Positions 852-62,400 of a DNA stretch of 64,000 bases are shown here, piece after piece. Made by a program: the position numbers and the translations under genes. Position 1 is the stretch's first letter. Each line of letters begins with the position of its first letter. Origin of the DNA: Macrostomum lignano (Eukaryota); NCBI GenBank assembly GCA_002269645.1, contig NIVC01003431.1, positions 34,012 to 98,011 of the forward strand, read 5' to 3'. The notes under the pieces are model-generated. The model saw only the letters and a program-made list of their open reading frames with translations, ran no database searches and had not been told where the DNA came from.

Positions 852-1252
852 AGTCAATCTATCCATACATGGAAGCAAAATTCCGACAACCCTCGACAAA
901 AAAGCAGTCAGTCCGAGGCCTCTAATTCGCAGAATTTCTGCCAATTTCTGCAACTCAGCACAGTCGCACGCCTAACTCATTTTGGCTACCAACACAAATA
1001 CAGAGTTTTGGAACCAAGCCAAGTGTGTTGGAGCCTCGACTCTACTAATGATGCTGTTGCCACGAAGTTGGCTAGAGCAAAAGTGGTCCAGGATATTCCC
1101 AAGAGCGTTTATTCGAGCACCGAGTTCGGAGTGAGGATAGAAAAACAGACTCAGAGGCATTCGCGCCCCTTATTTAGCCGCACTGTAGCCGGCATTGCAT
1201 TGGTTTGCACTTTTAATTTCCATGCTCGCCTCAAACCCGACATGCCATGCAG

Positions 1253-7922
<6,670 letters not shown>

Positions 7923-33200: not shown

Positions 33201-36200
33201 GGACGAGGATAGTAGTAGTAGTAGTAGCGAAGATTTAGCCGCTTCTGTGCCCAGTCTGGATCACGTGATTCACACTCTGTCCTTCGGTAGTACGGCTAAC
33301 AGTCAGCTGCGTCACGCTTTCAAAGAGGTTTCCTCGTTCACGCCGCTTGATAATCGGTCCGTGACGGATAAGCCTGAAGGCATTTCGCACGATTATTTTC
33401 TCAAAATTGTGCCCTCGATATTTGACGCACCATCCTTCAGGCTGTTTCCGTATCAGTTCACGTCTGTGTACAGGGTGAGGCTGAATGCTCCGGGGTGACT
33501 TTAGGTACCTCTGTGAGGGCAGCTGAGCTCTCACTGTAGGTTATTGGATGGCAGCTGAGCTCCCACTGTAGGATATTGGATGGCAGCTGAGCTCCCACTG
33601 TAGGATATTGGATGGCAGCTGAGCTCCCACTGTAGGATATTGGATGGCAGCTGAGCTCCCACTGTAGGATATTGGATGGCAGCTGAGCTCCCACTGTAGG
33701 ATATTGGATGGCAGCTGAGCTCCCACTGTAGGATATTGGATGGCAGCTGAGCTCCCACTGTAGGATATTGGATGGCAGCTGAGCTCCCACTGTAGGATAT
33801 TGGATGGCAGCTGAGCTCCCACAGCAAAATGGCGTGAAGTCTAACCAGAACCAAACGATAAACTGCAGCTCCTGCCATCGGGCCATGACCACGCTTTTTC
33901 CTACGGCAAGCCGGCCATTTGGTTTCGCTACGAGACAGCGCCTGTTGTAGTGAAATATAAGGAACACGAGAAGCCGTTCTATCACTTCCTGACTCAGGTG
34001 AGTCGACTCCACTTTTTGTTTTAACTGACTAACTAATAAGCTACTTATATTCCCTCTGGTAAATAAACCAGATAACATAACATCACAAGATAAACAAGAT
34101 AACATGCCCTATTCCGGTTATGCAAAATGTTATCTTGTATGAATCCTGTTTGCGTGACGAAATCTTAAGTTTCCTTGTTTCAAACAAGATTCAAATAGGA
34201 TTCATTGACCAGGTAACAATCGGGTAATTCATGCGAATCCTCGTGTTATCCTGTTTGTTATCTTGTTTGTTATCCTGTCTGGCAAACAGGATTCGCTGAC
34301 CAGGTAACAGTCGGGTAATTCATGCGAATCTTGCAGGGAAACATCGTGTTATCCTGTTTGTTATCTTGTTTGTTATCCTGTCTGGCAAACAGGATTCGCT
34401 GACCAGGTAACAGTCGGGTAATCCATGCAAAAGAAAGCCGGAAGGCATTGACATCAAATTTCGCAGGAAAGAAGCGTATAAAAAGTTGGTGCTTCAAGAT
34501 TTTGAGTAGCATCTCTATATTTAACAGCGGGATGTCATTTGTAAGCGCCTTATACAAACTAAACGGTAGCTCAACATGAACGGAAACTTCTGGAGAAACT
34601 TCTGGCATGCGTCTGAGTTTCGAGAGTCCAGTTACAAGTAGACCTACTTATACTGTGGTTACCAATTGCTACTTCTGAATTGGTGATCTACTGCGACCTG
34701 TTGTACTCGCTGGCGAGGTCGGACCTGCTGTACTCGGATGCGACTCTGACGGCGGTCGACGCATGAGCCAGACGTTTGAAAGATCGGGTTGCGCGCGCGG
34801 ACGGCGATTAATGAGACCACCGACGGGGGCTTGCATTATATGCCGGCACAATGGAACGACTTTGCATTATTAAAGTTAAATTAAATGGCGATGGAAGGCA
34901 GTTTCTCCGAAATATACACAGCTATAAAGAAACAGTAATGTACATACACACTCGATTGTCTAGCTCTAACAGACAGTGACGGTTCGCCGACAGGCATTGC
35001 CATATTATACGACCGTTCACTAGTATGTAACGTCAGCTGTGTCGATAGAATTGTCATTCGTAGCATAGTTGTCATCCGGAAACAACTGGCTTTCGTTAAT
35101 CGGCTGCTCGTAGACCGGAGACGAAGTGAATGGCGTGTCATATAAAGTATCCGTTTGGGCTGGGATGGAGTCGTCGTGCAGTTGCGTCCACGAAATGCCG
35201 ACTGCGCGAGGGGAAGATGTTACTTGATTGCCGCCGATCGGCGGTGTATTAAAGCCAGCCCACCAGACAGACATCAGCGAGCCGTAGGGAGCAGCAATAT
35301 AGGATGGAACTACGCCAGCAGCTCCGCTAGTACGACCTACTGGTTCCACTGGCAAATCAGCCAGAAATAGTTCGTCGTACTACCTCTTGACGCAAGTAGC
35401 TGCCCGTGCTGCAGCCGCCGCATGCTTGTCTACGGACAGCGAGGTGTCGTGCAGTCGACAATCTACAGAATTAGTTGTACATAGCGGCTGGTTTCGCTAA
35501 GATCAGTTTGATAGAAGTGAAACAGGTTGTACCTACGTATGTGCATCCCTTATATACGTGTAGGATGTTACTAGGTACAATATTGACAGAGCGTTTGTCT
35601 GGACGACCGGGCGGTGCAAAAATTGTCGGTCGGCGCAACAGAATAACATCGCCACGACGCAACGGCCCAATCTGCGAGCGTACGCTGCCTTGGACACTGC
35701 AACCAATCATCCCGGTTGGGTCGCATGCATCAATTGTAAAAGCCGACGAGGTTGACGCTGAGCAGATCTGCTGGTCAGTAACTCGTTAAATAAGTAGCAA
35801 CAATATCGGAGACCTGTTCGTTGACGAATGGCTTCCGTTCGCTGCTCAATTTCGCGCTTGTCTTTCGGCTCTATTAGTATTTGCCTAAAGCCGTCGTCGT
35901 TTGACAGGCGAACCAATGCGTTGGGGTTGACTTCACGTGGCAGCATTGTAACAATAGCGTCGGCAGCCTCCACAGCACCCATAGTCTGCTTCATTTGCGC
36001 CAACTGGTCAGTGGACCAATTACTGTGGGCATATATACCAACTTCTCGAGATTCGTCATCGATTAAAATCTGACCAGATTCGTCTTGCCGATCGGCAGAC
36101 TCTGCATTGACACTATCAGAGCCTCCGATTTTGCGTCTTGCAACATGTACTGCACTGAGTAGTCGTTCACACCAGTGCTCAACCACGCTCATAACCTGCT

Positions 36201-39200
36201 GCATTTTGGCGTCCCGACTGAAGTCACCTGTGATAGAGTGCGTGCAGATAAATATCGAGAGTTGCTGTTATTGAATAATTTAATCACTAGTTATTCAATA
36301 CAAAGATATTGAAATTACGCAGTAAAACAATAGTTTCTTTACGGTGACGCACGTTGCTCGTCCACAATGGAAACTTGCGAGCGCAATTGGTTGGTTAGTG
36401 TACAACACGAACCACAAGGATTCGGCGCACTATTAGTTTGCAACGGGCCCGACGCGGATGCGACGCGTTGCGCAGCAGCTATGCTAGTGTATGGTCCACT
36501 CCATATAGTGGCGCCATATCTTGCGACCGAAGCAGTCTTTGTTTTGGCTGTCACGACGACAATACGACAACCAACAGTGGGTTGCTCATAACGATCGTCA
36601 AGTGCAACAATATCGGTGCTAAGTATCGCACCTCTGTCGTTGTTGATGTCGTAAATGACAGCCCACGCGGACGAATCTGCAGATTTATAACCGCGCATTC
36701 CATCAGAGGCACTTGCTGCGCTTGCACTGGTACGAAGGTCACTCAGAAAGTTCTTAGCCTGAACAAGAAAACAGCAACAAATGAACTAAAAAAGCGACTA
36801 CAAGTGCTCAAAATACTCTCCACCGGCATTGATACAGGCTTGCATCCTGTGAAACCAGCTGTCGAAGCAATGCCGCCAATCCTCATCGCGGAGCTCCTCG
36901 ATGATGTTTTTAAACTCATTTACAGCTTCTTCCGGTGAAGAAAAGACTTGGCCCTTCAGAATCTCCTTGCACTTCGGAAACAAAAAAGTCGCACGGTGCC
37001 AGGTCTGGACTGTACGCAGGGTGAGTCATCAGCTGGACCCCACAGTCAGCCAGAAACTCGAGAGTTTGAGCCGCCGTGTGCGCACTGGCGTTTTCGTGGT
37101 GCAGAAGCTGCCCGCGCATTCCGCACCTTGGGCGCCTCTGGCTCACAGCAGAAAAGACTTTGGGTAGGCAAACCGTTGTGTACCAGTCAGCGGTGACTGT
37201 CTGGCGATCTTTAAGTGAAACGGAAGCCACATGCCCAGTGCGCATGAAGAAACAGGCCACCATCTGCTTGCCGACACTTCGGCTGCGTCGAAACTTGGTG
37301 GGGCTGTCCTCGTCTCCAAAGGTCCACATGGCTGACTGGCGCTTGCTTTCGGGGTCGTATTGATAAATCCAGGTCTCATCGCCCGTGAGGATGTCCCAGA
37401 TACGCCGGCTGGTCCCAGATTCGAATTTCTGCAGCATGAATCGGCACCAAGCCACCCTGGTGTCCTTCTGCACGTCAGACAGCTGATGGGGGATCCACCG
37501 GGAAGCCAGCTTCCGCACTCCAAGGTTTTCATGCAGAATGGCGTGCACACTCCCCGATCCAATACTGATCTCCTGCTGGATCTGCTGGTAGGTCACTCGC
37601 CGGTCAGCGGCAATCATGCTGGACACAGCGCAGATATTTTCTGGAGTCACTGCGTCACAGGGTCTCCCGGATCGATGTTCATCTTCGAGGCTTTCTCGAC
37701 CTCGGCGAAACTCAGCAAACCAGTTTTTGACGGTTGCGTATGAAGGACATAGATGGGTGAAAACGTTCTGTAAATTTTGATACTAATCGGCCGGCGACTT
37801 GCCTTGCTTGAAGTGCAAGTACATCATTGCTCTGAAGTCGCGATTTTCCAGCTTCATTGTTGAATTGAAGAACTCAGGGGGTGAACTAACTTTAACTCGC
37901 TGCAGTGGACTCAAAAGTGGCTGCTTCTGTTTGCAAATTTTGCTGCAATACTTTTAAAAGTTAGTCTTTACCATAGACAAATTTCATGCTTCTACGTCTC
38001 GTGGATCCTTTTTCTTTTCTTTTTTTGCAAGTTTTTCTTTGTTGACCTCGCGCTGGCGGTCCCATCGAAGATTTCCGACTGTGGCGATGCTTTCGAGACT
38101 GTCGATTGGTCGTACACTTTTTCGCGGTCGTTTTTCCGCTTGTTCCGCGTCTATATCAACGGGAGGTTCGTCCTCTTTTAAGTGATTAACGCAGCTCTTC
38201 TTGCCCATTACTTTCCAAGTCAAGCAGACGACTGAAAAGAGATGTTCAAAAGCATATAACTTTAAATAACACATTATGAAATTTTTAAGAATATGAAAGG
38301 ACGCTCTCAAGATACGATCATAATTTCCACAAGATCTTGCGTACACGCTAAAGTTAGTTCTAAGGAATTTCCTTATGGGATAGTGGACGGCCAACCAGTC
38401 GCTGTGGTGAAATACATTCTTGGTTCAATGCAACTACATAATGAAGTACTTAATGACGAAACACGAGATATAATGTAATAATGGACGCAAAATGCGTGAA
38501 GCACTTATTTACTGATACGTGTTTGATACACTGACGCAGTTACACAGTAATTGAAAAATTTAAATTGGCAGATTTCATACATAAAGTGATACCGTATAAA
38601 TGTAGAGTCCCCATGGGTGGATCGTGATGCCGCTCTTATGATTCAGTCACACTGTCATCATAGTGGTTGTGGAATTACGCATCTGGTGTACAAAGGAATG
38701 GCCATTGATGAAAAGATCGTGTGAACGTATTTTGCCTTATTTGATGCCTGTGTGAATGAGTGTTATAACGTTCATAGATAAAGTTGAAGAAGTTTTTTTA
38801 AACAGGGTGGCAACATACAGTGGAACAGATTTTATCTCAGCAATGAGCGGTACAGTACTTGACGGTACGAAGACTGCTTAATAAGTTCGTAGAAATTGTA
38901 TATTTCTATTATGCAAATAAAATGAGATTTCAAGTCTTCCGTTCAATAGCTGAGAGCTGTCATGTGAAATTTTAGTCTCCTCAACTAAAGGCTAAGACGC
39001 AGTGGTCGAAAAAGTGATACGACCCCAGATTCCTGAGCGCTTTCAGCTGCTTCCAAAAGTGTTATGTGATGAAGTCTCATCCCAGATGCATGCCTGGATC
39101 TTGACGATGAACGAACGATGAGCAAAGGCTATTACAAGCTGGAAACTGTCACCCATTTGGAATTGAGTGACTGCTTTGCAGCATGGTTTCATAGGACATA

Positions 39201-42200
39201 AAAAGCAACAATCTGTCTGAAAACTACGTTGAAAAGTCTCATTATGTGGGGTATATGCAAGCAAACGTTTGAGGTGACAGCTTACTCAGAATTGTCTTTT
39301 CCGCGAACTTATTAAGCAACGGCAATACAATACAATGGGCTTGGGCAGTACAACGAACACACAAGCGCATAGGAGAGCAAATTCACGAAAAAGATAGTTG
39401 CGCATGCGGCAGCGTGACTACATGCGTGTCGCTGACAGCACAGGATCCCACAATCAATTTGATAGGAACACGAATATCATTTCCGCCAATGTCACCGAAC
39501 GGATCGCAAGCCAGCTTGCGGACGTGGATGAGTCGGCAATCTCGATTTGGCGCATCGACCGGAATGGCCACGAGCACTAATAGAGGATCCTCCATCGGTG
39601 CGGTCAGACGGAGCGGTTCCATCAGTAGATGTAGATCGCCTCCATCCTCATCCGCTTCCAATTTGTAGACGCGACCAAAGTCTATCGCTGACCAACCAGC
39701 GTCAGTCCATACGGCAACAAAGCTGGAGACAACTCTTTTCTGTGACATAGACTGTCTAAAAACGTCGATCATTGTGCCGTCATGCAATGTAACTCGCTCC
39801 CATTTAATCGGATTGCCAGCATATCTTCTAGGTCGAGACACAGTCCACACCTGATGTTCTTCATTGTCATGCGTCTGGCGACTGGCGTGTTAGGCAACTG
39901 AAGATCTTCAGTTGTCTTGTCAGCCAATTGTGCAACTAATAGCTCAGTTTGAATGACATTCGCTCTATATCTACGTCGGTCGCTCGCGAGCCGCGTATGC
40001 GTTTACGAATACTACAATGAAATGACTCGAAAAGTGATGCCGATAACTGGTGTATTGGCCCTGCCAACTCTGCGTGCATCAGGGTATGCACGCATACCTG
40101 ATGAGCGTTTTAAGTCAAGGCCCGATTGGAGAACATTATCTGGAGTAGGCGATGAAAGTACGACAATGTCGTTCGCACATGTCAGCTCATCGATCGACGA
40201 AACAACACACGACGATGCGAACATGGCGGACGATACAGCCAGCAGTAGCTGATAGTACCTGCCGTGGTCATAGCATACCAGGAAATCTTCCAGTACCATC
40301 GGACCGTAAGCTAACATCCACATTTCAAACTCATGGCCCCGATATCTCTTCTGAACACTATGTGGCACTCGAATTCTTGCAAGTCGTTCATCAATCTGGC
40401 TAATCCATCGGTGCAAATCGGGGTTTCTCGCCGTCTGGTCTGGCTTTTGATGTCGTATTAGGAACAACTGGTACATCGGATAACCGGTCAGACCAGCACA
40501 GTTTTGGTGCAAATAGCACGGCGGACAACCCCTAATGTAGTCGAACCCGACCAGTTCACTCAGTGGAGATCTGGCTCGCACTCCAAGCGTGTCTGTCTTG
40601 TCGTCAATACGAGCCACGCGCATTCTGTCTCTTTCGGATTCGTGCCGATCGGCAAGCATGTTAGTGTCGGTGACGCACCGGAACTCTGCCTGTGTACACC
40701 CACGTCTGACAGCAAGTTCAGCATAGCGTTGGTGATTTCAAGTGGAAACATACGTCCGGATCCAAACGTCTGTTTCTTCGTCCGAATGTAACATTTTTCG
40801 CATCCGTATATCGCGTTAAATCGCTTCATACCTAGTGCATCCGCTCTAGCAGGGGCATCGAAGATGGCCTGGAAAGAGTGCAGTCTAAGGATCTGCTTAT
40901 TGCCGTGTCTGTCTACATACTCGACGCCTTGGAACCTTAACCTTTCCCACGTAATCGGCGTTGCCACTATGCTTGCATTCTCTGCTTGCCAGTCAATGCG
41001 GGTGCGGCCCTTTTACGTATGCCAAGCCGCCAATTTCTCATATAGTGCGTTGCATTGTGCGTTTCGTCCGTCGGATCTGGCCCTGCAGACTGTGCTGAAG
41101 TGCCGACGTCGTCCATGCTGGAGAAGTCAGAGTAGGGCTGTTTTGTAACAAAACGGTATTATACTAATCCGATCAGCTATATGACATTCATATATGCAAT
41201 AGGTTTGATGAAACGGGGTCAAATCTATATAGGCGTGTGTAGCTATTCCAGATCACTACGGTATCCTACTAAAAATGAGAGGATCCAGGATTTCCTTGAC
41301 TACTGTGAGTGTTGACCATAGTATACAATTGCACTAACATATGGCCGGATGAACGGTAACAGTTGAAATTCTGTAATAGAAATCATGGTTAGATAGTTCG
41401 ATGAAATGAGTGTAAGGCAATGCAACCATGATCTGTAATGATCAAACAGAACGTTCGTAAACAGCAACAGCGAAGCAAGAACAGATGGTAAGTTTTTTTT
41501 ACTTCCAACGGTACAAATGCAATAATGAAACATGGTGGACACGAATAGTGCATGATAAAAATTATTAAAATGCAAGCATCAAATGCCGAACTGGCAAGAT
41601 TTAATTGTAAAATTGTAAACAGCACAATGGCAATGGGACAAGGGAATTTGCATGTTTTAAAGAGTAGGTGGCATCTGCAAGATCGGACAAGGACAAGGTC
41701 GCGTGACCAACATTAAGGGCGATGGAAAAAATTAATGAACTGACGAATCAACGGACGACGGACAGAGAAGCAGAATAGTACGTGTATAAATGAAAAAAAA
41801 CTACTCTACTTGCTACTTGGGTACGCGGCTTTTGCATCGGAAATTCGTGCACGGCCGAAACTCTGTACTTTGGCTGGCAAATTTGCCAGCCTCCGCACAG
41901 ACACCAGACTGGCCACATTTTCCCTACTATACTGTTCACTCGCTGTGATACCGTTTTTCTGCATTTATCGTTTCACCGATGCTAATCAGGATCGGCTAAT
42001 TCTAATTACTTATAACTGCGAATGGAACACGCATTAGAGTGAACGGGCTAGTAGAACAGACAAAATCAAATCAGGGACGGGTGTCGGTGAAAAGCAGTGC
42101 TAATATCAAAAGCCTAACTGGCGGATACAAGTCCGTTCTGACAGTTCCTGTGCACGCGTATTCTATTGCAACCGATCACTATTCGCAGCTCAATTTACGA

Positions 42201-45200
42201 TTTTCGTTCGCAGCGCGCCTGCCTGAGTGATGAAGGTCGCATCGGTCTCACACCCACCCTACTCGCATGACTTGGCCCCCTGCGACTTTTTCCTTTTACC
42301 GACAGTCAAACAGCAGATTCGGGGCCAGCGATTTGTGACCCCAGATGCAGCCCTGCAAACTTACATGCATGCAATGGACACCCTGTCAAGTTCGTCCACC
42401 CTGTTTCGCCTAATGGAGAAGTGCATTGCTGTTGGAGAGAGTTACTTTAAAAAAGTTTAGAGTTTTGTTTGGTTATTAGCATTATAACCGTTCCATTCTA
42501 AAAACTTTCGGAGTAAACCCTCGTATACAGGGCAGCAACATGCACAGAAACTGTCTGACTGAACTAGACAAAAATATACACACTGCGGCACTGCTTCACA
42601 GATCACAAATTAGTTCATGAACGGGGCAGTCGCCGTCCCTGTGCGTACACTCAGGAACAAACAAAGTCCTTCGGTATGGAGCACAGCAACTCGTCGATCG
42701 ACGGGTTGTCTGTGCTGCACGCGGCATCGGCATGTCGAGTGGCAAGCACGCGCGGGACGCCGACCCGGTCAGGCAGTAGCCCCATGCTGTCGAAAGCGTC
42801 TCTGCGACGCGTCGCCTCGCCACCGGCGCACTTGAACAGTTCGACGCTGGGCTCGCCGGCATCAAAATTTAAATAGTGGCCTTCGACGACGACAATCATA
42901 ATGCTGTAGCATAATACAATATGCGGCAGACACTTGCACTCGTTTGGCCCAGTTTTCACCAGTCTGGCGCAGGCGTCGCCAGGCAGTGCGTCAGTTATTC
43001 GGCGACGACCGCCGCCGCTGTTTTCTTGACGACCGCCAAGCTTCTCATTATACCAAAAGTCCATGAACAGCGCCTGCGATGCCATGCACAGCGGTGCATC
43101 GCAATCAGCACTATCCTGCATACTGTGGTACGCAGGCTTCGACTTTGCAGGCAGTTTAAACGCTTTCAGCGTATGCCGCAGCATATATTGGCCCGCGTCA
43201 AAGCTTGAATGGTTTAAGAGTCTGATGCAGACCCAATATAAGCACGGCCAGACGCTGGGCTAGTAGTGCGTTGAATGCGTTCTCTATGCGCAGCACCATT
43301 GTCGACTTGGCCAAGCAGATTTGCTGGCCCTCGTTGAAAAAATGATTAGTCAACGGCTGCACCAAACGCACCACCTCGGTCGGCCAGGCGAAAATTAACA
43401 CTGCAGTTAGTGCATCGCACCCGCAATGTACGGCGCGGATGCGCGCCTCTTCTCTGCCTGCGGAGATGGCATTCGCATGGCGCTCTGCGAGTGTCAGGCG
43501 GCGATTTGACCGGTGTACTGGCTGAAACACTAACTGCTGATTTTGTTTAGAAAGAAGAAAAACTTCCGCACAGTGCGGGCCGACGAAGCCGCTAATGTCA
43601 CGGTCGGCCATCGATGAACTGACCCCGCGAATAGCATCTGCTGATGGCAGGCTATTCAGCATCGAGAAGCGCCGTTAACTGTGTCGAATGGCGTGCCATC
43701 TTCATCGCCCGCGTCCACTATTGTGCACAGTACCCGGACGATGGACTCTACACGCATCATCTGCAAAGGTATTATTGGATGCGCGTTTATAGTAGCATTT
43801 AAATCATACTGATTTAAATCGGTAGCATTGTAATGGCATTACAAGCAGTATATTAATAGTCGAATTCTACTTACGCGTACGTCGTCCATAATTTCTCCGA
43901 ATCGACGGCGATTTTCGGAGCGATTCGACGGCGGCAGCGTCTGCAGGGTCGACGGATGCAGCTGCTACAGAAGCGCAAGACTGGCCGCGACGCTGGGCGT
44001 TGGCTGGCAGATCTGCCGGCCGCCGCCCATGTGTCGGCTTGGCCACCTGGCCAGAAGTCATGGTTTGCGCCGCTGCTGCAGTTGTCGGCGTCACTTCGTC
44101 GACGACGATGTCGTTGCCGTCGACGTGCAGCAGCCCTGTGCAGTGCACGTCCACGAATTCGCGCACACTATCGCAGCCAACGCTCTGGACCGCTTCAACA
44201 AGCGTCTGGCGCCGGACAGCTAGGCAGGTTTTGTTGACGTCCTTCAAACTCTTTCGCGTATTTCTTTGGTCAAATGATTGGTGTGGCCGAGGTACGCGAA
44301 TCATCATTAGTAGCTGCTCGCGCAACTGCGTGACCGAGTAGTCGAAAGAGGTCGCATATATAGTGGTTTGCATTTTGCAGTATGATGCAAGCTCTGAAAT
44401 TGCATGATACATTTTTAACTCGTATAGTCGAATTGAACGCACGGTATTGAAGTAAATGTTCTATCTCAGTGAATACTTCTGCCAACTGCAATTAATGCTA
44501 AACATTTGATCCGAACTACTTTGGTATGATTCCTGACCTGCTATAAGAATATATACGAGCTATCCATATAGCATATATACATCTACGCGTGTATCGATTT
44601 GGATCTCGGCGATTTTACGGACGAAATGAAAGACTACGTCCAACTGTATGATAAACACATAAATAACTAGTTGCATACAAATATATACTAGTTTCTTTCC
44701 CTACTTCTATATAGTAAATCCTGTATACTAAAATTGAGTTGTCTGTAACTCAGTTATCCGTACGATATGCGCTCCGTTACCCTTTGATATACGCGCTAGT
44801 GTAATGAAACTACTAATATTAAAATGATAGGAAAGAAATGAATGCAGAACTTGTAAACAGAAACTTATTTTCGTAGATTTATTTGCGTCAGCTGTACAGG
44901 ATCTGTACGAAAATATCAAGACAAGATTACCGACACTCCTATAAACACCGGTTTAAATAGCCGCCAACTGGACCGCAATTTGTTATAATGGCCGAGTCTC
45001 TAAAGACTACTCGCTTGACTTGTTCGAGGTTTTATTAGCCCTCGACAAGATTACCGACACTCGTAGTCTGTAACGACTACTCTCTTGACTTGTTCGAGGA
45101 TTTATTAACCCTCGACAAGATTACCGACACTCGTAGTTCGTATAGACGACTCTCTCGACTTGATCTGCTCACGGCTGGTGCAACTGCAAACGCCTTAGAC

Positions 45201-59444: not shown

Positions 59445-62400
59445 ATGTCGCGACGCATGACTGTGTACGACATCACTAGGGGCATAGATGAGTACAGGCA
59501 TGGACTGTCGGATGAGCGGTACGAGGTAAGTGCCTGCTGTGCGCTGCATAGGAACTTGGGTAGCGCTTGTGCTGCACTTGTGCCTTTTTAATTGTTTGAT
59601 TAGTCCTTGACAGATGTGACACAGATAGTTGCACTCCTAATACTGACGTCCTGAAAGTGGCACTGCTGACGCTATAATGGCACTCCCTGATGCTAAAATG
59701 GCACTAAAGACACTAAAAGTGGCCCTATTGACACTAAAATGGCATTCCTGACACAAGTATGGCACTCCTTACACAGAAATAAAAATGGCACTCCTGACGC
59801 TTAAATGGCACTCCTGACGCTAAAATGGCACTCCTGACGCTAAAATGGCACTCCTGACGCTAAAATGGCACTCCTGACACTAAAAGTGGCACTCCTGGCG
59901 CTAAAGTGGCACTCCTGACACTAGAAATGGCACCTTTGACACCAAATTGACACGCCTGACAACAGAAATTACCTCTGACAACAAACGCGACACCGCTGAC
60001 AGCTAACAAGCAGGCATTATAACAAGCGCAACCTTAATTGTCCTCCACACCAGAGCTCGCTGACATTCGCCGATCTGCCAGCCAAGCTCATGATCAAGGT
60101 GTTCAGCTACCTGTCCCACTCCGAGCTCTGCCGGATCTGCCTGGTCAGCAAGCGCTGGCGCGAACTCGCCTACGACAGCCGACTGTGGACGAATCTCCGA
60201 CTGAGGCCGGAGTTTGGCGGCCTCTCCGTGTCGAATGTCAGCCAGTTTGTCGATCTGATCGGGTCGAGATTCTCCACAGCGTTGCGTAGCATCGACCTGC
60301 CATGCGAGTTGATCACGGTGCCTGTGCTGGAAGAGATCGCCAGGCAGTGCGTCAACCTGCGCTACATGACGCTGGACTTCAGCAAGGCGATGCAACTGCA
60401 CGACTATAACGATTTGGTAGATTTTCCAGCTAATCTTTATTACCTGTGCGTCTGCCTGAGCGACGTTATCTTTATGGAGGGCCTCATGCGGAAGATTTAC
60501 CACTGCCTGTCTACAGTGCAGGTGCTGCACCTGATTGGTGAGTTTCACCTGAGTGAAGATGCCTGAGTGAGGATACCTGAGTGAGGATACCTGAGTGAAG
60601 ATACCTGAGTGAGGATTACCTGAGTGAGGATACCTGAGTGAAGATACCCGAGTGAAGATACCTGAGTGAGGATTACCTGAGTGAGGATACCTGAGTGAGG
60701 ATACCTGAGTGAGGATACCTGAGTGAAGATACCTGAGTGAGGATTACCTGAGTGAGGATACCTGAGTGAAGATACCCGAGTGAAGATACCTGAGTGAGGA
60801 TTACCTGAGTGAGGATACCTGAGTGAAGATACCCGAGTCAAGATACCTGAGTGAGGATACCTGAGTGAAGATACCTGAGTGAGGATTACCTGAGTGAAGA
60901 TATACCTGAGTGAGTATACCTGAGTTAAGATATACCTGAGTGAAGATACCTGAATTTAAGATACCTGAGTTAAGATATACCTGAGTGAGTATACCTGAGT
61001 TAAGATACCTGAGTGAAGATACCTGAATTTAAGATACCTGAGTTAAGATATACCTGAGTGAGTATACCTGAGTTAAGATACCTGAGTGAAGATACCTGAA
61101 TTTAAGATACCTGAGTTAAGATATACCTGAGTGAGTATACCTGAGTTAAGATACCTGAGTGAAGATACCTGAATTTAAGATACCTGAGTTAAGATATACC
61201 TGAGTGAAGATACCTGAGTGAAGTGCGGCTCGGCTGTTGCCTTATGAGCAGGACAGATCAATTCCCGCACTGCATCACTGCTCAGGCACTTTCGAGCAGA
61301 GCTCAGAAGAGGAGGAGGAGATCTACGAGGTGATCAACATCAGCAAGATCAAAGCGCACACGCCGAACCTGCGCGTGGTGAATCTCTACGGAGTGATGTT
61401 CGTTGACGACTCTCACGTGGAACTGCTGTCCTTCAACTGTGTGCATCTGGAGTGCGTGGCGCTGAATTTCTGCATCAAGGTCACGGGTTCGTCGTTGAAA
61501 AACCTGCTAGAAAAGTGCAAGAAGATCAAGACGCTGCTGCTGCATCACTGCGGTAAGAAGGAGTTTGATCATCGTCATCACCACCGTCCCCATCACCACC
61601 ATCATCACCACAATCATCATCATCATCACCATCATCATCATCATCGTCAGCATCATCATCTTCTTATTAGCATCAGCATCTTCATCATTCAAGCTAGATT
61701 TATTCAATGTTATATTCGTTCAACTTTAACTTCATATTCAAGAGCTGGTCGATGCCCACATGATGGCGGTGGACTGGGAACACAGTCACGTGAAAGAGCT
61801 GGACATCACCTCCACTGAACTGTCCGCTAATTGCCTGGAGAATGTGCTGACTAGAATTCGATCGCTGGAATATTTAGCCGTTGGCTATTGCGATTTCTTC
61901 ACCGATGCGGTGAGTAAAAATCACATTATTGCTACTTAAAGTAGCAAAAAATATTTTTTCGTAGACTACCCAATACTTTTTACAGGTGATGGAAAAGCTG
62001 ATGGAAACTGGAAACCTCCGTGAACTTCGGGCCATAGACATCAGCTACACGTGCAACCTGTCCGAGCCAGTCATTGGAAAGTTTATCAAGCGCTACGGGC
62101 CACAGCTGCTCGGGCTCATGCTGCACGGCAAACCTCTGCTGAATGAGTTCTTTTGGACCGCTAACATACCACTCTTAAAGAACATCAAGTATGATCAGCA
62201 AAATTTTCTCACACTTAAAAACCCTATAACTTCAGCCTCAACCCCCCACCTCACTCCCAGCCCCGATTCCACCGCTATAACTTCTGCCCCAACTTCCACC
62301 TCACTCCCAGCCCCGATTCCACCGCTATAACTTCTGCCCCAACACCCACCTCACTCCCAGCCCCGATTCTACCGCTATAACTTCTGCCCCAACACCCACC

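What the first reader, a model, noticed from the sequence alone, without database searches (positions are those of the whole stretch)
35020..36204. Transposon-borne HROB/MCM8IP-like OB-fold: a captured homologous-recombination factor?
The frame 35787-35471 aligns by eye with the DUF4539 OB-fold of HROB: DPTG, LxxGxVxLL, I/VFxP and NV/IxPxNxxHxY are all present with similar spacing. HROB is the ssDNA-binding activator of the MCM8-MCM9 helicase in HR and crosslink repair. It sits between an upstream frame (36204-35707) and a downstream Ser/Thr/acidic frame (35355-35020), with a plausible splice joint G|GTACAA (~35531) to CTGTAG|AT (~35462), suggesting one spliced, now decaying accessory gene. 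I know of no description of DUF4539 as cut-and-paste transposon cargo. Such a protein could bind ssDNA or steer repair of the excision break toward gap repair that restores the donor copy (inference).
Basis: partly seen in the sequence, partly recalled or inferred. Interest (0 to 1): 0.8.

Follow-up and report, generated by a model that had tools for sequence, protein, structure and literature searches.

The report
HROB-like gene inside flatworm transposon
A small, still-open gene carrying the OB-fold domain of the DNA-repair factor HROB lies inside an old 12-kb cut-and-paste transposon inserted in an intron of a Macrostomum flatworm gene; it is most likely captured cargo of untested function, seen so far in one copy only.

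Summary
The minus-strand peptide encoded at about 35832-35549 matches Pfam PF15072 (HROB OB-fold) at E=3e-9, 37 bits, above the curated cut-off of 30.8. With canonical GT-AG introns it joins the upstream frame into an uninterrupted 232-aa or 310-aa product, so the gene is not visibly decaying. It lies inside inserted DNA: block 34050-46095 has 23-nt perfect terminal inverted repeats, inverted subterminal repeats and a perfect 8-bp target-site duplication, and it splits a short intron of a host ERGIC/ERV-like gene. The EnSpm label is not supported. The duplication is 8 bp rather than 3, the ends are not CACTA, and no internal ORF matches any transposase model except nested mariner remnants. The host is a Macrostomum flatworm, not an insect. 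The 3' end of the gene region (35204-34671) recurs in three M. lignano proteins. Nothing in 1.8 billion proteins resembles the N-terminus or the OB-fold, so whether the OB-fold is family cargo or a one-off capture stays open. Published work shows the HROB OB-fold docks MCM9 rather than binding DNA, which changes the mechanistic guess. Most likely this is passenger or captured cargo. A repair-steering accessory role is possible but untested.

The parts
34042..34049 (.). Left copy of the 8-bp target-site duplication TACTTATA
   Evidence: Exact direct repeat with 46096-46103, immediately outside the TIRs. Monte Carlo on shuffled flanks gives p about 0.006 for an 8-mer within 12 nt of both TIR cores.
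34050..34115 (.). Left terminal inverted repeat of the 12,046-bp element; the core is TCTGGTAAATAAACCAGATAACA
   Evidence: Inverted repeat I1, 34055-34115 against 46031-46091. The 23-nt core is identical in both arms.
34130..34431 (.). Left subterminal repeats (103-bp units holding TGTTATCYTGTTTG motifs)
   Evidence: TRF arrays at 34192-34428. GTTATC is enriched at this end and its complement GATAAC at the other end.
34671..35204 (-). Segment that recurs at other Macrostomum lignano loci; it covers the last ~60 codons of the downstream frame plus the 3' flank
   Evidence: phmmer hits P0001-P0003 are all M. lignano. tblastn maps them to 35204-34671 at 72-93% amino-acid identity.
35020..36204 (-). 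HROB-like gene, full span of the longest model
   Evidence: Gene models built and translated. Pfam HROB hit.
35814..36204 (-). Exon 1 (ATG at 36204; 130 codons plus 1 nt). It has no detectable homologue.
   Evidence: ORF; donor AACAG|GTCTCC. No relatives found.
35758..35813 (-). Intron 1 (56 nt, GT..AG, TACTGAC branch-like motif 17 nt before the acceptor)
   Evidence: If this intron is retained, the frame stops at 35707.
35533..35757 (-). Exon 2, encoding the body of the OB-fold
   Evidence: The single-sequence AlphaFold model is all-beta with 6 strands, at low confidence.
35549..35832 (-). Pfam PF15072 HROB match (protein residues 125-200; spans intron 1)
   Evidence: E=3.3e-9, 37 bits against a cut-off of 30.8, profile 9-83 of 85.
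35380..35462 (-). It ends at TAG 35382-35380 and gives a 232-aa product.
35020..35336 (-). Alternative exon 3c (intron 35532-35337, 196 nt, acceptor CCAGTAG|GT). It joins exon 2 in frame to the Ser/Thr/acidic frame and gives a 310-aa product.
   Evidence: This exon has the clearest frame-specific codon signal of the gene's exons.
36798..37857 (-). Nested mariner-like transposase remnant (1 internal stop, 1 frameshift)
   Evidence: Pfam HTH_48, HTH_32 and Transposase_1. Sequence shown.
39386..44460 (-). String of broken ORFs (150-240 aa pieces, all on the minus strand), putatively the element's decayed transposase gene
   Evidence: ORFs. There is no Pfam hit and no homologue. The identification rests only on strand asymmetry and a remembered D-x-P-A...C-x-x-C motif at about 40860-40770.
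42227..42457 (+). Second mariner C-terminal fragment, nested in the broken ORF string
   Evidence: Inverted match to mariner 36978-37023 (I2). The translation reads HPPYSHDLAPCDFFLLP....
44995..46002 (.). Right subterminal repeats (70-bp units at 44995-45165; 45-bp repeats at 45845-46002)
46031..46095 (.). Right terminal inverted repeat
46096..46103 (.). Right copy of the 8-bp target-site duplication TACTTATA
33896..33997 (+). Host ERGIC/ERV41-46-like gene, penultimate exon (..KEHEKPFYHFLTQ|gtgagt)
   Evidence: Translation. Pfam COPIIcoated_ERV.
46166..46273 (+). Host ERGIC/ERV-like gene, last exon (ttttag|ACAIIGGSFTVSGILDSLIF..KLP*)
   Evidence: The Pfam COPIIcoated_ERV profile, positions 181-227 of 227, aligns without a gap across the 33997/46166 junction.

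Best explanation
A 12,046-bp TIR DNA transposon of unresolved superfamily (34050-46095) inserted into a roughly 114-nt intron of a Macrostomum ERGIC/ERV-like gene and has since decayed. Its long minus-strand reading frame is broken and carries mariner insertions. Near its left end, in the same orientation as that frame, it holds a three-exon gene whose middle exon encodes an HROB-family OB-fold. The most likely account is that this is a host-derived HROB-family gene, or a large part of one, picked up at the DNA level (its introns are retained) and moved as passenger cargo, as Pack-type MULE, CACTA and Helitron elements do with host genes. If translated, it would display the module that in human HROB docks onto MCM9, but without a recognisable MCM8-binding region, so it would be inert or at most a modulator. 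Shown: the domain homology, the open spliced ORF, and the position inside a TIR/TSD-bounded insertion. Inferred: the host origin, the passenger status, and the lack of a role in transposition.
For: The Pfam HROB hit lies above the curated cut-off. GT-AG introns give 232-aa and 310-aa open products. The 23-nt perfect TIR core, inverted subterminal repeats and perfect 8-bp TSD (p about 0.006) bound the block. The host ERV-family Pfam profile runs contiguously across the two exons that flank the block, so all 12 kb is inserted DNA. The left-end region recurs in three other M. lignano gene models, so it belongs to a repeat family. No paralogue of the OB-fold or N-terminus exists among 1.84e9 representative proteins or in the word-indexed search, although three proteins hit the neighbouring 3' segment. 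That fits the OB-fold part being rare or unique rather than a standard family gene. The codon usage of exons 1-2 is weak and not host-like.
Against: Only one copy could be examined, and no Macrostomum genome was reachable. Absence of the OB-fold from other copies is therefore not shown, because repeat masking or missing annotation would give the same silence. No parent host HROB gene was identified. The ORF and all splice sites are intact while the neighbouring frames are broken, which could hint at constraint; however, P(no disruption by chance) is about 0.2-0.4 by my rough estimate from the disruption density in the mariner and the long ORF string. The element's own transposase is unidentified, so nested delivery by another element cannot be excluded.
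Confidence: 0.5

Rival explanations
1. The HROB-like gene is a genuine accessory gene of the transposon family. Its protein docks onto host MCM9 (and perhaps MCM8) and recruits or stimulates MCM8-9 at the double-strand gap left by excision. That would favour long-tract homologous-recombination synthesis, which copies the 12-kb element back into the donor site and makes cut-and-paste effectively replicative.
For: The gene lies in the same orientation as the long broken ORF string and inside the TIRs. The ORF and splice sites are intact while the rest is decayed. The C-terminal peptide DTPFT.SPVYEQPINESQL.PDD.YATNDNSID is kept in frame at 85-93% identity in other copies. Loss of HROB/MCM8IP specifically impairs long-tract gene conversion (PMC7290032), and its OB-fold is the MCM9-docking, helicase-activating module (PMC11055865). 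Helitrons provide a precedent for a transposon carrying a host-type OB-fold repair or replication gene (PMC4683698).
Against: No second copy carrying the OB-fold was found anywhere. No MCM8-binding motif or any similarity outside the OB-fold could be shown. Between the window and P0001/P0002, the stretch upstream of the conserved C-terminal peptide reads in different frames, which argues against coding constraint there. Codon signal is weak. Expression is unknown.
Confidence: 0.15
2. It is a working host gene, either the flatworm's HROB orthologue or a domesticated copy, that merely resides in transposon-derived intronic DNA as a nested gene on the opposite strand of the ERGIC-like gene.
For: The open ORF has canonical introns. 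The whole OB-fold domain is present rather than a fragment (profile 9-83 of 85). HROB co-occurs with MCM8-9 across multicellular eukaryotes (PMC7290032), so a flatworm with MCM8-9 would need one. Nested genes in introns are common in animals (general knowledge).
Against: The gene lies inside a TIR/TSD-bounded insertion, so it is not at an ancestral locus. Codon usage is unlike the host exons of the window. No matching protein exists in the M. lignano entries of the searched collections, although neighbouring repeat-derived peptides are there. Its product is 232-310 aa against 647 aa for human HROB, with nothing recognisable outside the OB-fold.
Confidence: 0.2
3. There is no gene: the OB-fold match and the open frames are chance features of decayed repeat DNA.
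For: Single-sequence AlphaFold models are low confidence (pLDDT 47 and 56) and Foldseek finds nothing significant. There are no pairwise homologues. Codon signal is weak for exons 1-2.
Against: The Pfam score is above the gathering threshold with near full-length profile coverage at E about 3e-9. The match sits exactly within an exon bounded by in-frame GT-AG sites that link it to a 130-codon upstream ORF.
Confidence: 0.07

Closest known systems
HROB / MCM8IP / C17orf53 (Pfam PF15072, formerly DUF4539)
   Same: It has the same OB-fold domain family, matched above Pfam's curated threshold over profile positions 9-83 of 85. The domain is preceded by a region predicted with low confidence, as in HROB, where everything except the OB-fold is largely disordered (PMC11055865).
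   Different: The product is 232-310 aa, against 647 aa for human HROB. No similarity could be detected to the proline-rich region, the RPA1-binding motifs or the MCM8-binding stretch. It sits inside a transposon insertion rather than at a host locus. No pairwise-detectable relative exists in 1.84e9 proteins.
RPA-like OB-fold genes carried by Helitrons (e.g. plant Helitron families, PMC4683698)
   Same: Both are DNA transposons carrying a host-type OB-fold gene from the replication and recombination toolkit alongside their own enzyme.
   Different: Helitrons are rolling-circle elements without TIRs or TSDs. Their cargo is RPA70-like and binds ssDNA, and it is documented in many copies. Here the element is a TIR/TSD cut-and-paste type, the domain is HROB-type (an MCM9-docking module in humans), and only one copy is known.
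Host-gene capture (transduplication) by cut-and-paste elements: Pack-MULEs and gene-carrying CACTA elements
   Same: Host-like coding sequence with retained introns lies between the TIRs of a DNA transposon.
   Different: Typical captures are fragments with broken frames. Here the whole domain and an open spliced ORF are present. The parent gene has not been identified, and the element is animal and unclassified.
EnSpm/CACTA (CMC superfamily) elements with TnpD transposase plus TnpA accessory protein
   Same: Both are large elements with long subterminal repeat arrays at both ends and, possibly, two genes in the same orientation. A D-x-P-A...C-x-x-C stretch at about 40860-40770 resembles the second catalytic region of CMC transposases; this rests on my memory only.
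   Different: The TSD is 8 bp rather than 3 bp. The termini are TTCCCTCTGG/ACTATCTGG rather than CACTA. There is no Pfam Transposase_21 or related hit, and no homologue was found.

Membership tests
HROB/MCM8IP family (PF15072) | OB-fold domain matching the family profile above the curated threshold | tested here: met
   37.0 bits and E=3.3e-9 against a cut-off of 30.8, profile 9-83 of 85; 35.6 bits on the 310-aa model.
HROB/MCM8IP family (PF15072) | OB-barrel three-dimensional fold | tested here: inconclusive
   Single-sequence AlphaFold2 gave pLDDT 47 for the whole protein and 56 for the domain, which was all-beta with 6 strands. The best Foldseek E-value against PDB was 0.4-1.2, so the matches are not meaningful. 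No MSA could be built because no homologues were retrievable.
HROB/MCM8IP family (PF15072) | MCM8-binding motif upstream of the OB-fold (human residues 396-413 / 362-440) | not testable with these tools
   The motif is described in PMC7290032 and PMC11055865, but neither its sequence nor a profile was available. phmmer found no similarity to any protein outside the C-terminal repeat-derived stretch.
HROB/MCM8IP family (PF15072) | Conserved apolar residue of the MCM9 interface (human F553) | not testable with these tools
   A Phe is present in the IFAP motif, but the residue-to-residue alignment to human HROB could not be printed or checked.
HROB/MCM8IP family (PF15072) | Orthologous single-copy host locus | tested here: not met
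   The gene lies inside a TIR/TSD-bounded 12-kb insertion in an intron of another gene.
EnSpm/CACTA (CMC) transposons | 3-bp target-site duplication | tested here: not met
   The only significant flanking direct repeat is the 8-bp TACTTATA; no 3-bp TSD pairs with CACTA-like ends.
EnSpm/CACTA (CMC) transposons | CACTA(C/G) termini | tested here: not met
   The TSD-defined termini are TTCCCTCTGG... and ...CCAGATAGT. A CACTAC (reverse complement, 46117-46122) lies outside the right TSD and has only a GACTAAC counterpart on the left.
EnSpm/CACTA (CMC) transposons | DDE transposase of the Transposase_21 / CMC type | tested here: not met
   There were no Pfam hits at E<=10 for any minus-strand ORF in 39386-44460 and no homologues. 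The only support is a motif I remember.
EnSpm/CACTA (CMC) transposons | Arrays of subterminal repeats at both ends | tested here: met
   Arrays at 34192-34428, 44995-45165 and 45845-46002, with GTTATC/GATAAC motifs in inverted orientation. This feature is shared with other superfamilies.
TIR (class II, cut-and-paste) DNA transposon, superfamily open | Terminal inverted repeats flanked by a target-site duplication, interrupting otherwise contiguous host sequence | tested here: met
TIR (class II, cut-and-paste) DNA transposon, superfamily open | Multiple copies in the genome | tested here: inconclusive
   Only the 35204-34671 segment is seen elsewhere, in three M. lignano proteins. No genome was available, there is no other copy in the window, and the metagenome scans were empty.
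TIR (class II, cut-and-paste) DNA transposon, superfamily open | Recognisable transposase | tested here: not met
   Only nested mariner remnants are recognisable. The element's own enzyme is unidentified.

The most novel reading that the evidence does not exclude
A family of large cut-and-paste transposons in flatworms encodes its own HROB-type activator of the host MCM8-9 helicase. The activator would bias repair of the excision gap toward long-tract homologous recombination, so that the donor copy is restored. This would be a transposon-encoded repair-pathway steering factor not described for any TIR element.
Probability: 0.1. Interest if true: 0.8.

Novelty: new member of a known kind. Interest (0 to 1): 0.4.

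Why it matters
Cut-and-paste transposons gain copies only if the excision gap is repaired from a template that still carries the element, and for a 12-kb element that needs long-tract recombination synthesis. HROB with MCM8-9 is the pathway implicated in exactly that step in vertebrates. A transposon that carries an HROB-type module would therefore be a natural experiment on whether mobile elements manipulate repair-pathway choice. It would also extend the Helitron RPA precedent to TIR elements. If the gene is only a captured passenger, it is still a clean animal example of DNA-level capture of a whole repair-protein domain, and a pointer to a very divergent HROB family member in Platyhelminthes. 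HROB has been reported as undetectable in some invertebrate models (C. elegans and Drosophila, PMC6771392).

Tried and rejected
- Homologue searches found nothing. Word-indexed searches with exon 1+2, the transposase-like core and a concatenate of all other internal ORFs returned no hits. Full phmmer against 1.84e9 representatives hit only the C-terminal repeat-derived stretch. PDB sequence search returned nothing at E<=10.
- Structure was uninformative. Two single-sequence AlphaFold2 runs gave pLDDT 47 and 56, and two Foldseek-PDB searches had no match below E=0.3.
- Searches for other copies failed. Self-BLAST of the element against the window found none. The metagenome scans with the protein and with the TIR core were empty. 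An exact-protein look-up of the 165-aa ORF found nothing on record.
- I rejected the insect-host assumption I started with. The repeat-derived peptides match Macrostomum lignano proteins at 72-93% identity.
- I rejected CACTA ends. I first took the CACTAC at 46117-46122 as the terminus, but it lies outside the 8-bp TSD and no 3-bp TSD fits it.
- I rejected my by-eye idea that the M. lignano gene models P0001/P0002 use the same splice acceptor as exon 3c. tblastn supports homology only from 35204 downstream.
- I rejected a suspected ~49-bp duplication joining two transposase-like ORFs near 43200, because no direct repeat was found.
- No clean mariner TIRs could be found, so that copy is truncated or degenerate.
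- The bacterial promoter/terminator scan is not applicable to this eukaryotic sequence and showed nothing above shuffles.

Full report
**Observation.** The middle one reads ...SAFTIDACDPTGMIGCSVQGSVRSQIGPLRRGDVILLRRPTIFAPPGRPDKRSVNIVPSNILHVYKGCTYV. Pfam hmmscan assigns this peptide to PF15072 (HROB, the former DUF4539) at E=3.3e-9 and 37.0 bits. That is above the curated cut-off of 30.8 and covers profile positions 9-83 of 85. The hit is reproduced on the OB frame alone and on a longer gene model. The next best family, tRNA_anti-codon OB-fold, scores 12.5 bits and is not significant. The homology claim therefore stands.

**Gene model.**
- Exon 1 (36204-35814) ends at AACAG|GTCTCC.
- Intron 1 is 56 nt (35813-35758), with a TACTGAC branch-like motif, and ends at TCTGCTCAG|CG. 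It joins exon 1 in frame to exon 2 (35757-35533), which encodes the OB-fold.
- From the donor G|GTACAA at 35533/35532, two acceptors keep the frame open.
- The acceptor CCAGTAG|GT at 35336 gives a 310-aa product that runs through the Ser/Thr/acidic frame to the stop at 35022-35020.
- A third model with an extra 57-nt intron gives 333 aa.

The locus is therefore not visibly decaying, since no stop or frameshift needs explaining away. Which 3' exon is used cannot be decided without transcripts.

**Host and context.** Full phmmer of the 333-aa model against 1.84e9 representative proteins returned three hits, all to residues 287-332. All three are Macrostomum lignano entries. tblastn maps them to window 35204-34671 at 72-93% identity. 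The window is therefore from a Macrostomum flatworm or a close relative, not an insect. The 3' end of the gene region belongs to a repeat that is exonised in other gene models, one of which UniRef labels LAMTOR5. The window also carries a Frizzled gene, an SDR gene and an F-box gene.

**The gene lies in transposon-delivered DNA.**
- A 61-nt inverted repeat pairs 34055-34115 with 46031-46091 and has a 23-nt perfect core, TCTGGTAAATAAACCAGATAACA.
- Both ends carry arrays of subterminal repeats with GTTATC/GATAAC motifs in inverted orientation.
- Immediately outside the repeats lies a perfect 8-bp direct repeat, TACTTATA (34042-34049 and 46096-46103). Shuffling the flanks gives such a match in 0.6% of trials.
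- The block splits a host gene. A plus-strand exon ends at 33997 (...KEHEKPFYHFLTQ|gtgagt) and the next begins at 46166 (ttttag|ACAIIGGSFTVSGILDSLIF...).
- The Pfam COPIIcoated_ERV profile aligns across that junction without a gap, positions 181-227 of 227.
- Without the block the intron would be about 114 nt.

Everything between 34050 and 46095, the HROB-like gene included, arrived by insertion.

**What kind of transposon.** The TSD is 8 bp rather than 3. The TSD-defined termini are TTCCCTCTGG and ACTATCTGG. A CACTAC at 46117-46122 lies outside the TSD. None of the broken minus-strand ORFs between 39386 and 44460 hits any Pfam model, even at E<=10, or any protein in the searched collections. 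One stretch, AIFDAPARADALGMKRFNAIYGCEKC, reminds me of the second catalytic region of CMC-type transposases. That is a recollection, not a test. The only recognisable transposase sequences are a mariner-like remnant at 37857-36798, with one stop and one frameshift, and a second mariner fragment at 42227-42457 on the plus strand. Both are nested. The element is old, degraded and of unresolved superfamily. An 8-bp TSD would fit hAT, P or Zisupton-like elements (general knowledge).

**Family cargo or one-off.**
- Nothing similar to exon 1 or the OB-fold exists in the word-indexed collection, in 1.84e9 representatives, in the PDB or in JGI metagenomes.
- The adjacent 3' segment has three M. lignano hits.
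- That asymmetry mildly favours the OB-fold part being rare or unique. It is equally what one expects if deletion derivatives outnumber full-length copies, or if repeats were masked before annotation.
- A crude codon-usage score trained on host exons of the window gives 0.07 and -0.11 bits per codon for exons 1 and 2, and 0.16 for exon 3c. Host exons give 0.2-0.6 and the neighbouring transposon frames 0.03-0.21. The gene therefore does not look like a well-adapted host gene.
- The intactness of the ORF is not significant. From the disruption density in the mariner and in the long ORF string, I estimate a 20-40% chance of no disruption.

**Mechanism.** Acharya et al. 2024 (PMC11055865) report that human HROB lacking the OB-fold still binds ssDNA but cannot stimulate MCM8-9. 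They also report that the OB-fold contacts MCM9 (F553 against MCM9 M45), while an unstructured region upstream binds MCM8. Huang et al. 2020 (PMC7290032) show that loss of MCM8IP impairs long-tract gene conversion in particular. A transposon-borne HROB-type module would therefore be expected to act, if at all, by docking MCM9. With an MCM8-binding region it would activate MCM8-9. As a lone OB-fold it would titrate it. The idea that it promotes long-tract gap repair at the excised donor site is coherent and attractive for a 12-kb element, but nothing here tests it.

My best-supported reading (0.5) is a captured host-type gene riding as a passenger. A genuine accessory gene (0.15), a resident or domesticated host gene (0.2) and chance (0.07) remain as rivals.

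**Comparison and novelty.** The closest known cases are HROB itself, the RPA-like OB-fold genes of Helitrons (PMC4683698) and gene capture by Pack-type cut-and-paste elements. For HROB, the domain test is met, the orthologous-locus test is not met, and the partner motifs are untestable. My literature searches for HROB or DUF4539 together with transposons found no description of such cargo. HROB is reported as not detected in C. elegans and Drosophila (PMC6771392). I rate this as a new member of a known kind, host-type repair gene inside a DNA transposon, with moderate interest. It would rise sharply if other copies carry the gene under purifying selection.

Noticed in passing
window 33998-46165 (host exons ~33896-33997 and 46166-46273, + strand): A host ERGIC/ERV41-46-like gene (Pfam COPIIcoated_ERV) has its last intron inflated from about 114 nt to 12.2 kb by the element. 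The HROB-like gene lies antisense to it.
   Followed up: yes
window 36798-37857 (-) and 42227-42457 (+): Two mariner-like transposase remnants are nested in the big element. The first is nearly full length with one stop and one frameshift; the second is a C-terminal fragment on the other strand. No clean mariner TIRs were found.
   Followed up: partly
window 34671-35204; proteins P0001, P0002, P0003: Pieces of this repeat are built into predicted Macrostomum lignano proteins, including one that UniRef labels LAMTOR5. This looks like exonisation or mis-annotation of transposon copies in introns. The peptide DTPFT.SPVYEQPINESQL.PDD.YATNDNSID stays in frame at 85-93% identity, while the stretch upstream of it reads in different frames in different copies.
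   Followed up: partly
window 40770-40860 (-): The peptide AIFDAPARADALGMKRFNAIYGCEKC, in a broken ORF, resembles from memory the D-x-P-A...C-x-x-C region of CMC/KDZ-type transposases. It has no Pfam or homologue support.
   Followed up: partly
window 1247-7922 (+): This is a Frizzled receptor gene: an Fz cysteine-rich domain at 1247-1460 and the 7TM region in 6077-7922 (Pfam Fz, Frizzled). A long intron between them is full of CTGT-type microsatellite (1467-2109, 2663-3274).
   Followed up: partly
window 53449-57102: About 3.6 kb of tetranucleotide-type microsatellite gives spurious ORFs of more than 1000 aa of SIYL repeats on the minus strand, with extreme GC skew (0.81 in 54-56 kb).
   Followed up: no
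window 33518-33822; 46956-47731; 49480-50000: Three minisatellites lie in or near host introns: 32 bp x 9.5 (99% identical), 20 bp x 38.5, and 34 bp x 15.
   Followed up: no
window 50125-52441 (+) and 60090-61818 (+): These are a short-chain dehydrogenase gene (adh_short) and an F-box protein gene whose downstream ORF (61237-61818) carries a His-rich tract. They were used only as host coding references.
   Followed up: partly
window 36339-36698 (-): A 119-aa ORF lies between the mariner remnant and the HROB-like gene, in the same orientation. It has no Pfam hit or homologue and a weak codon signal. I could not tell whether it is an upstream exon, a separate relic or chance.
   Followed up: partly
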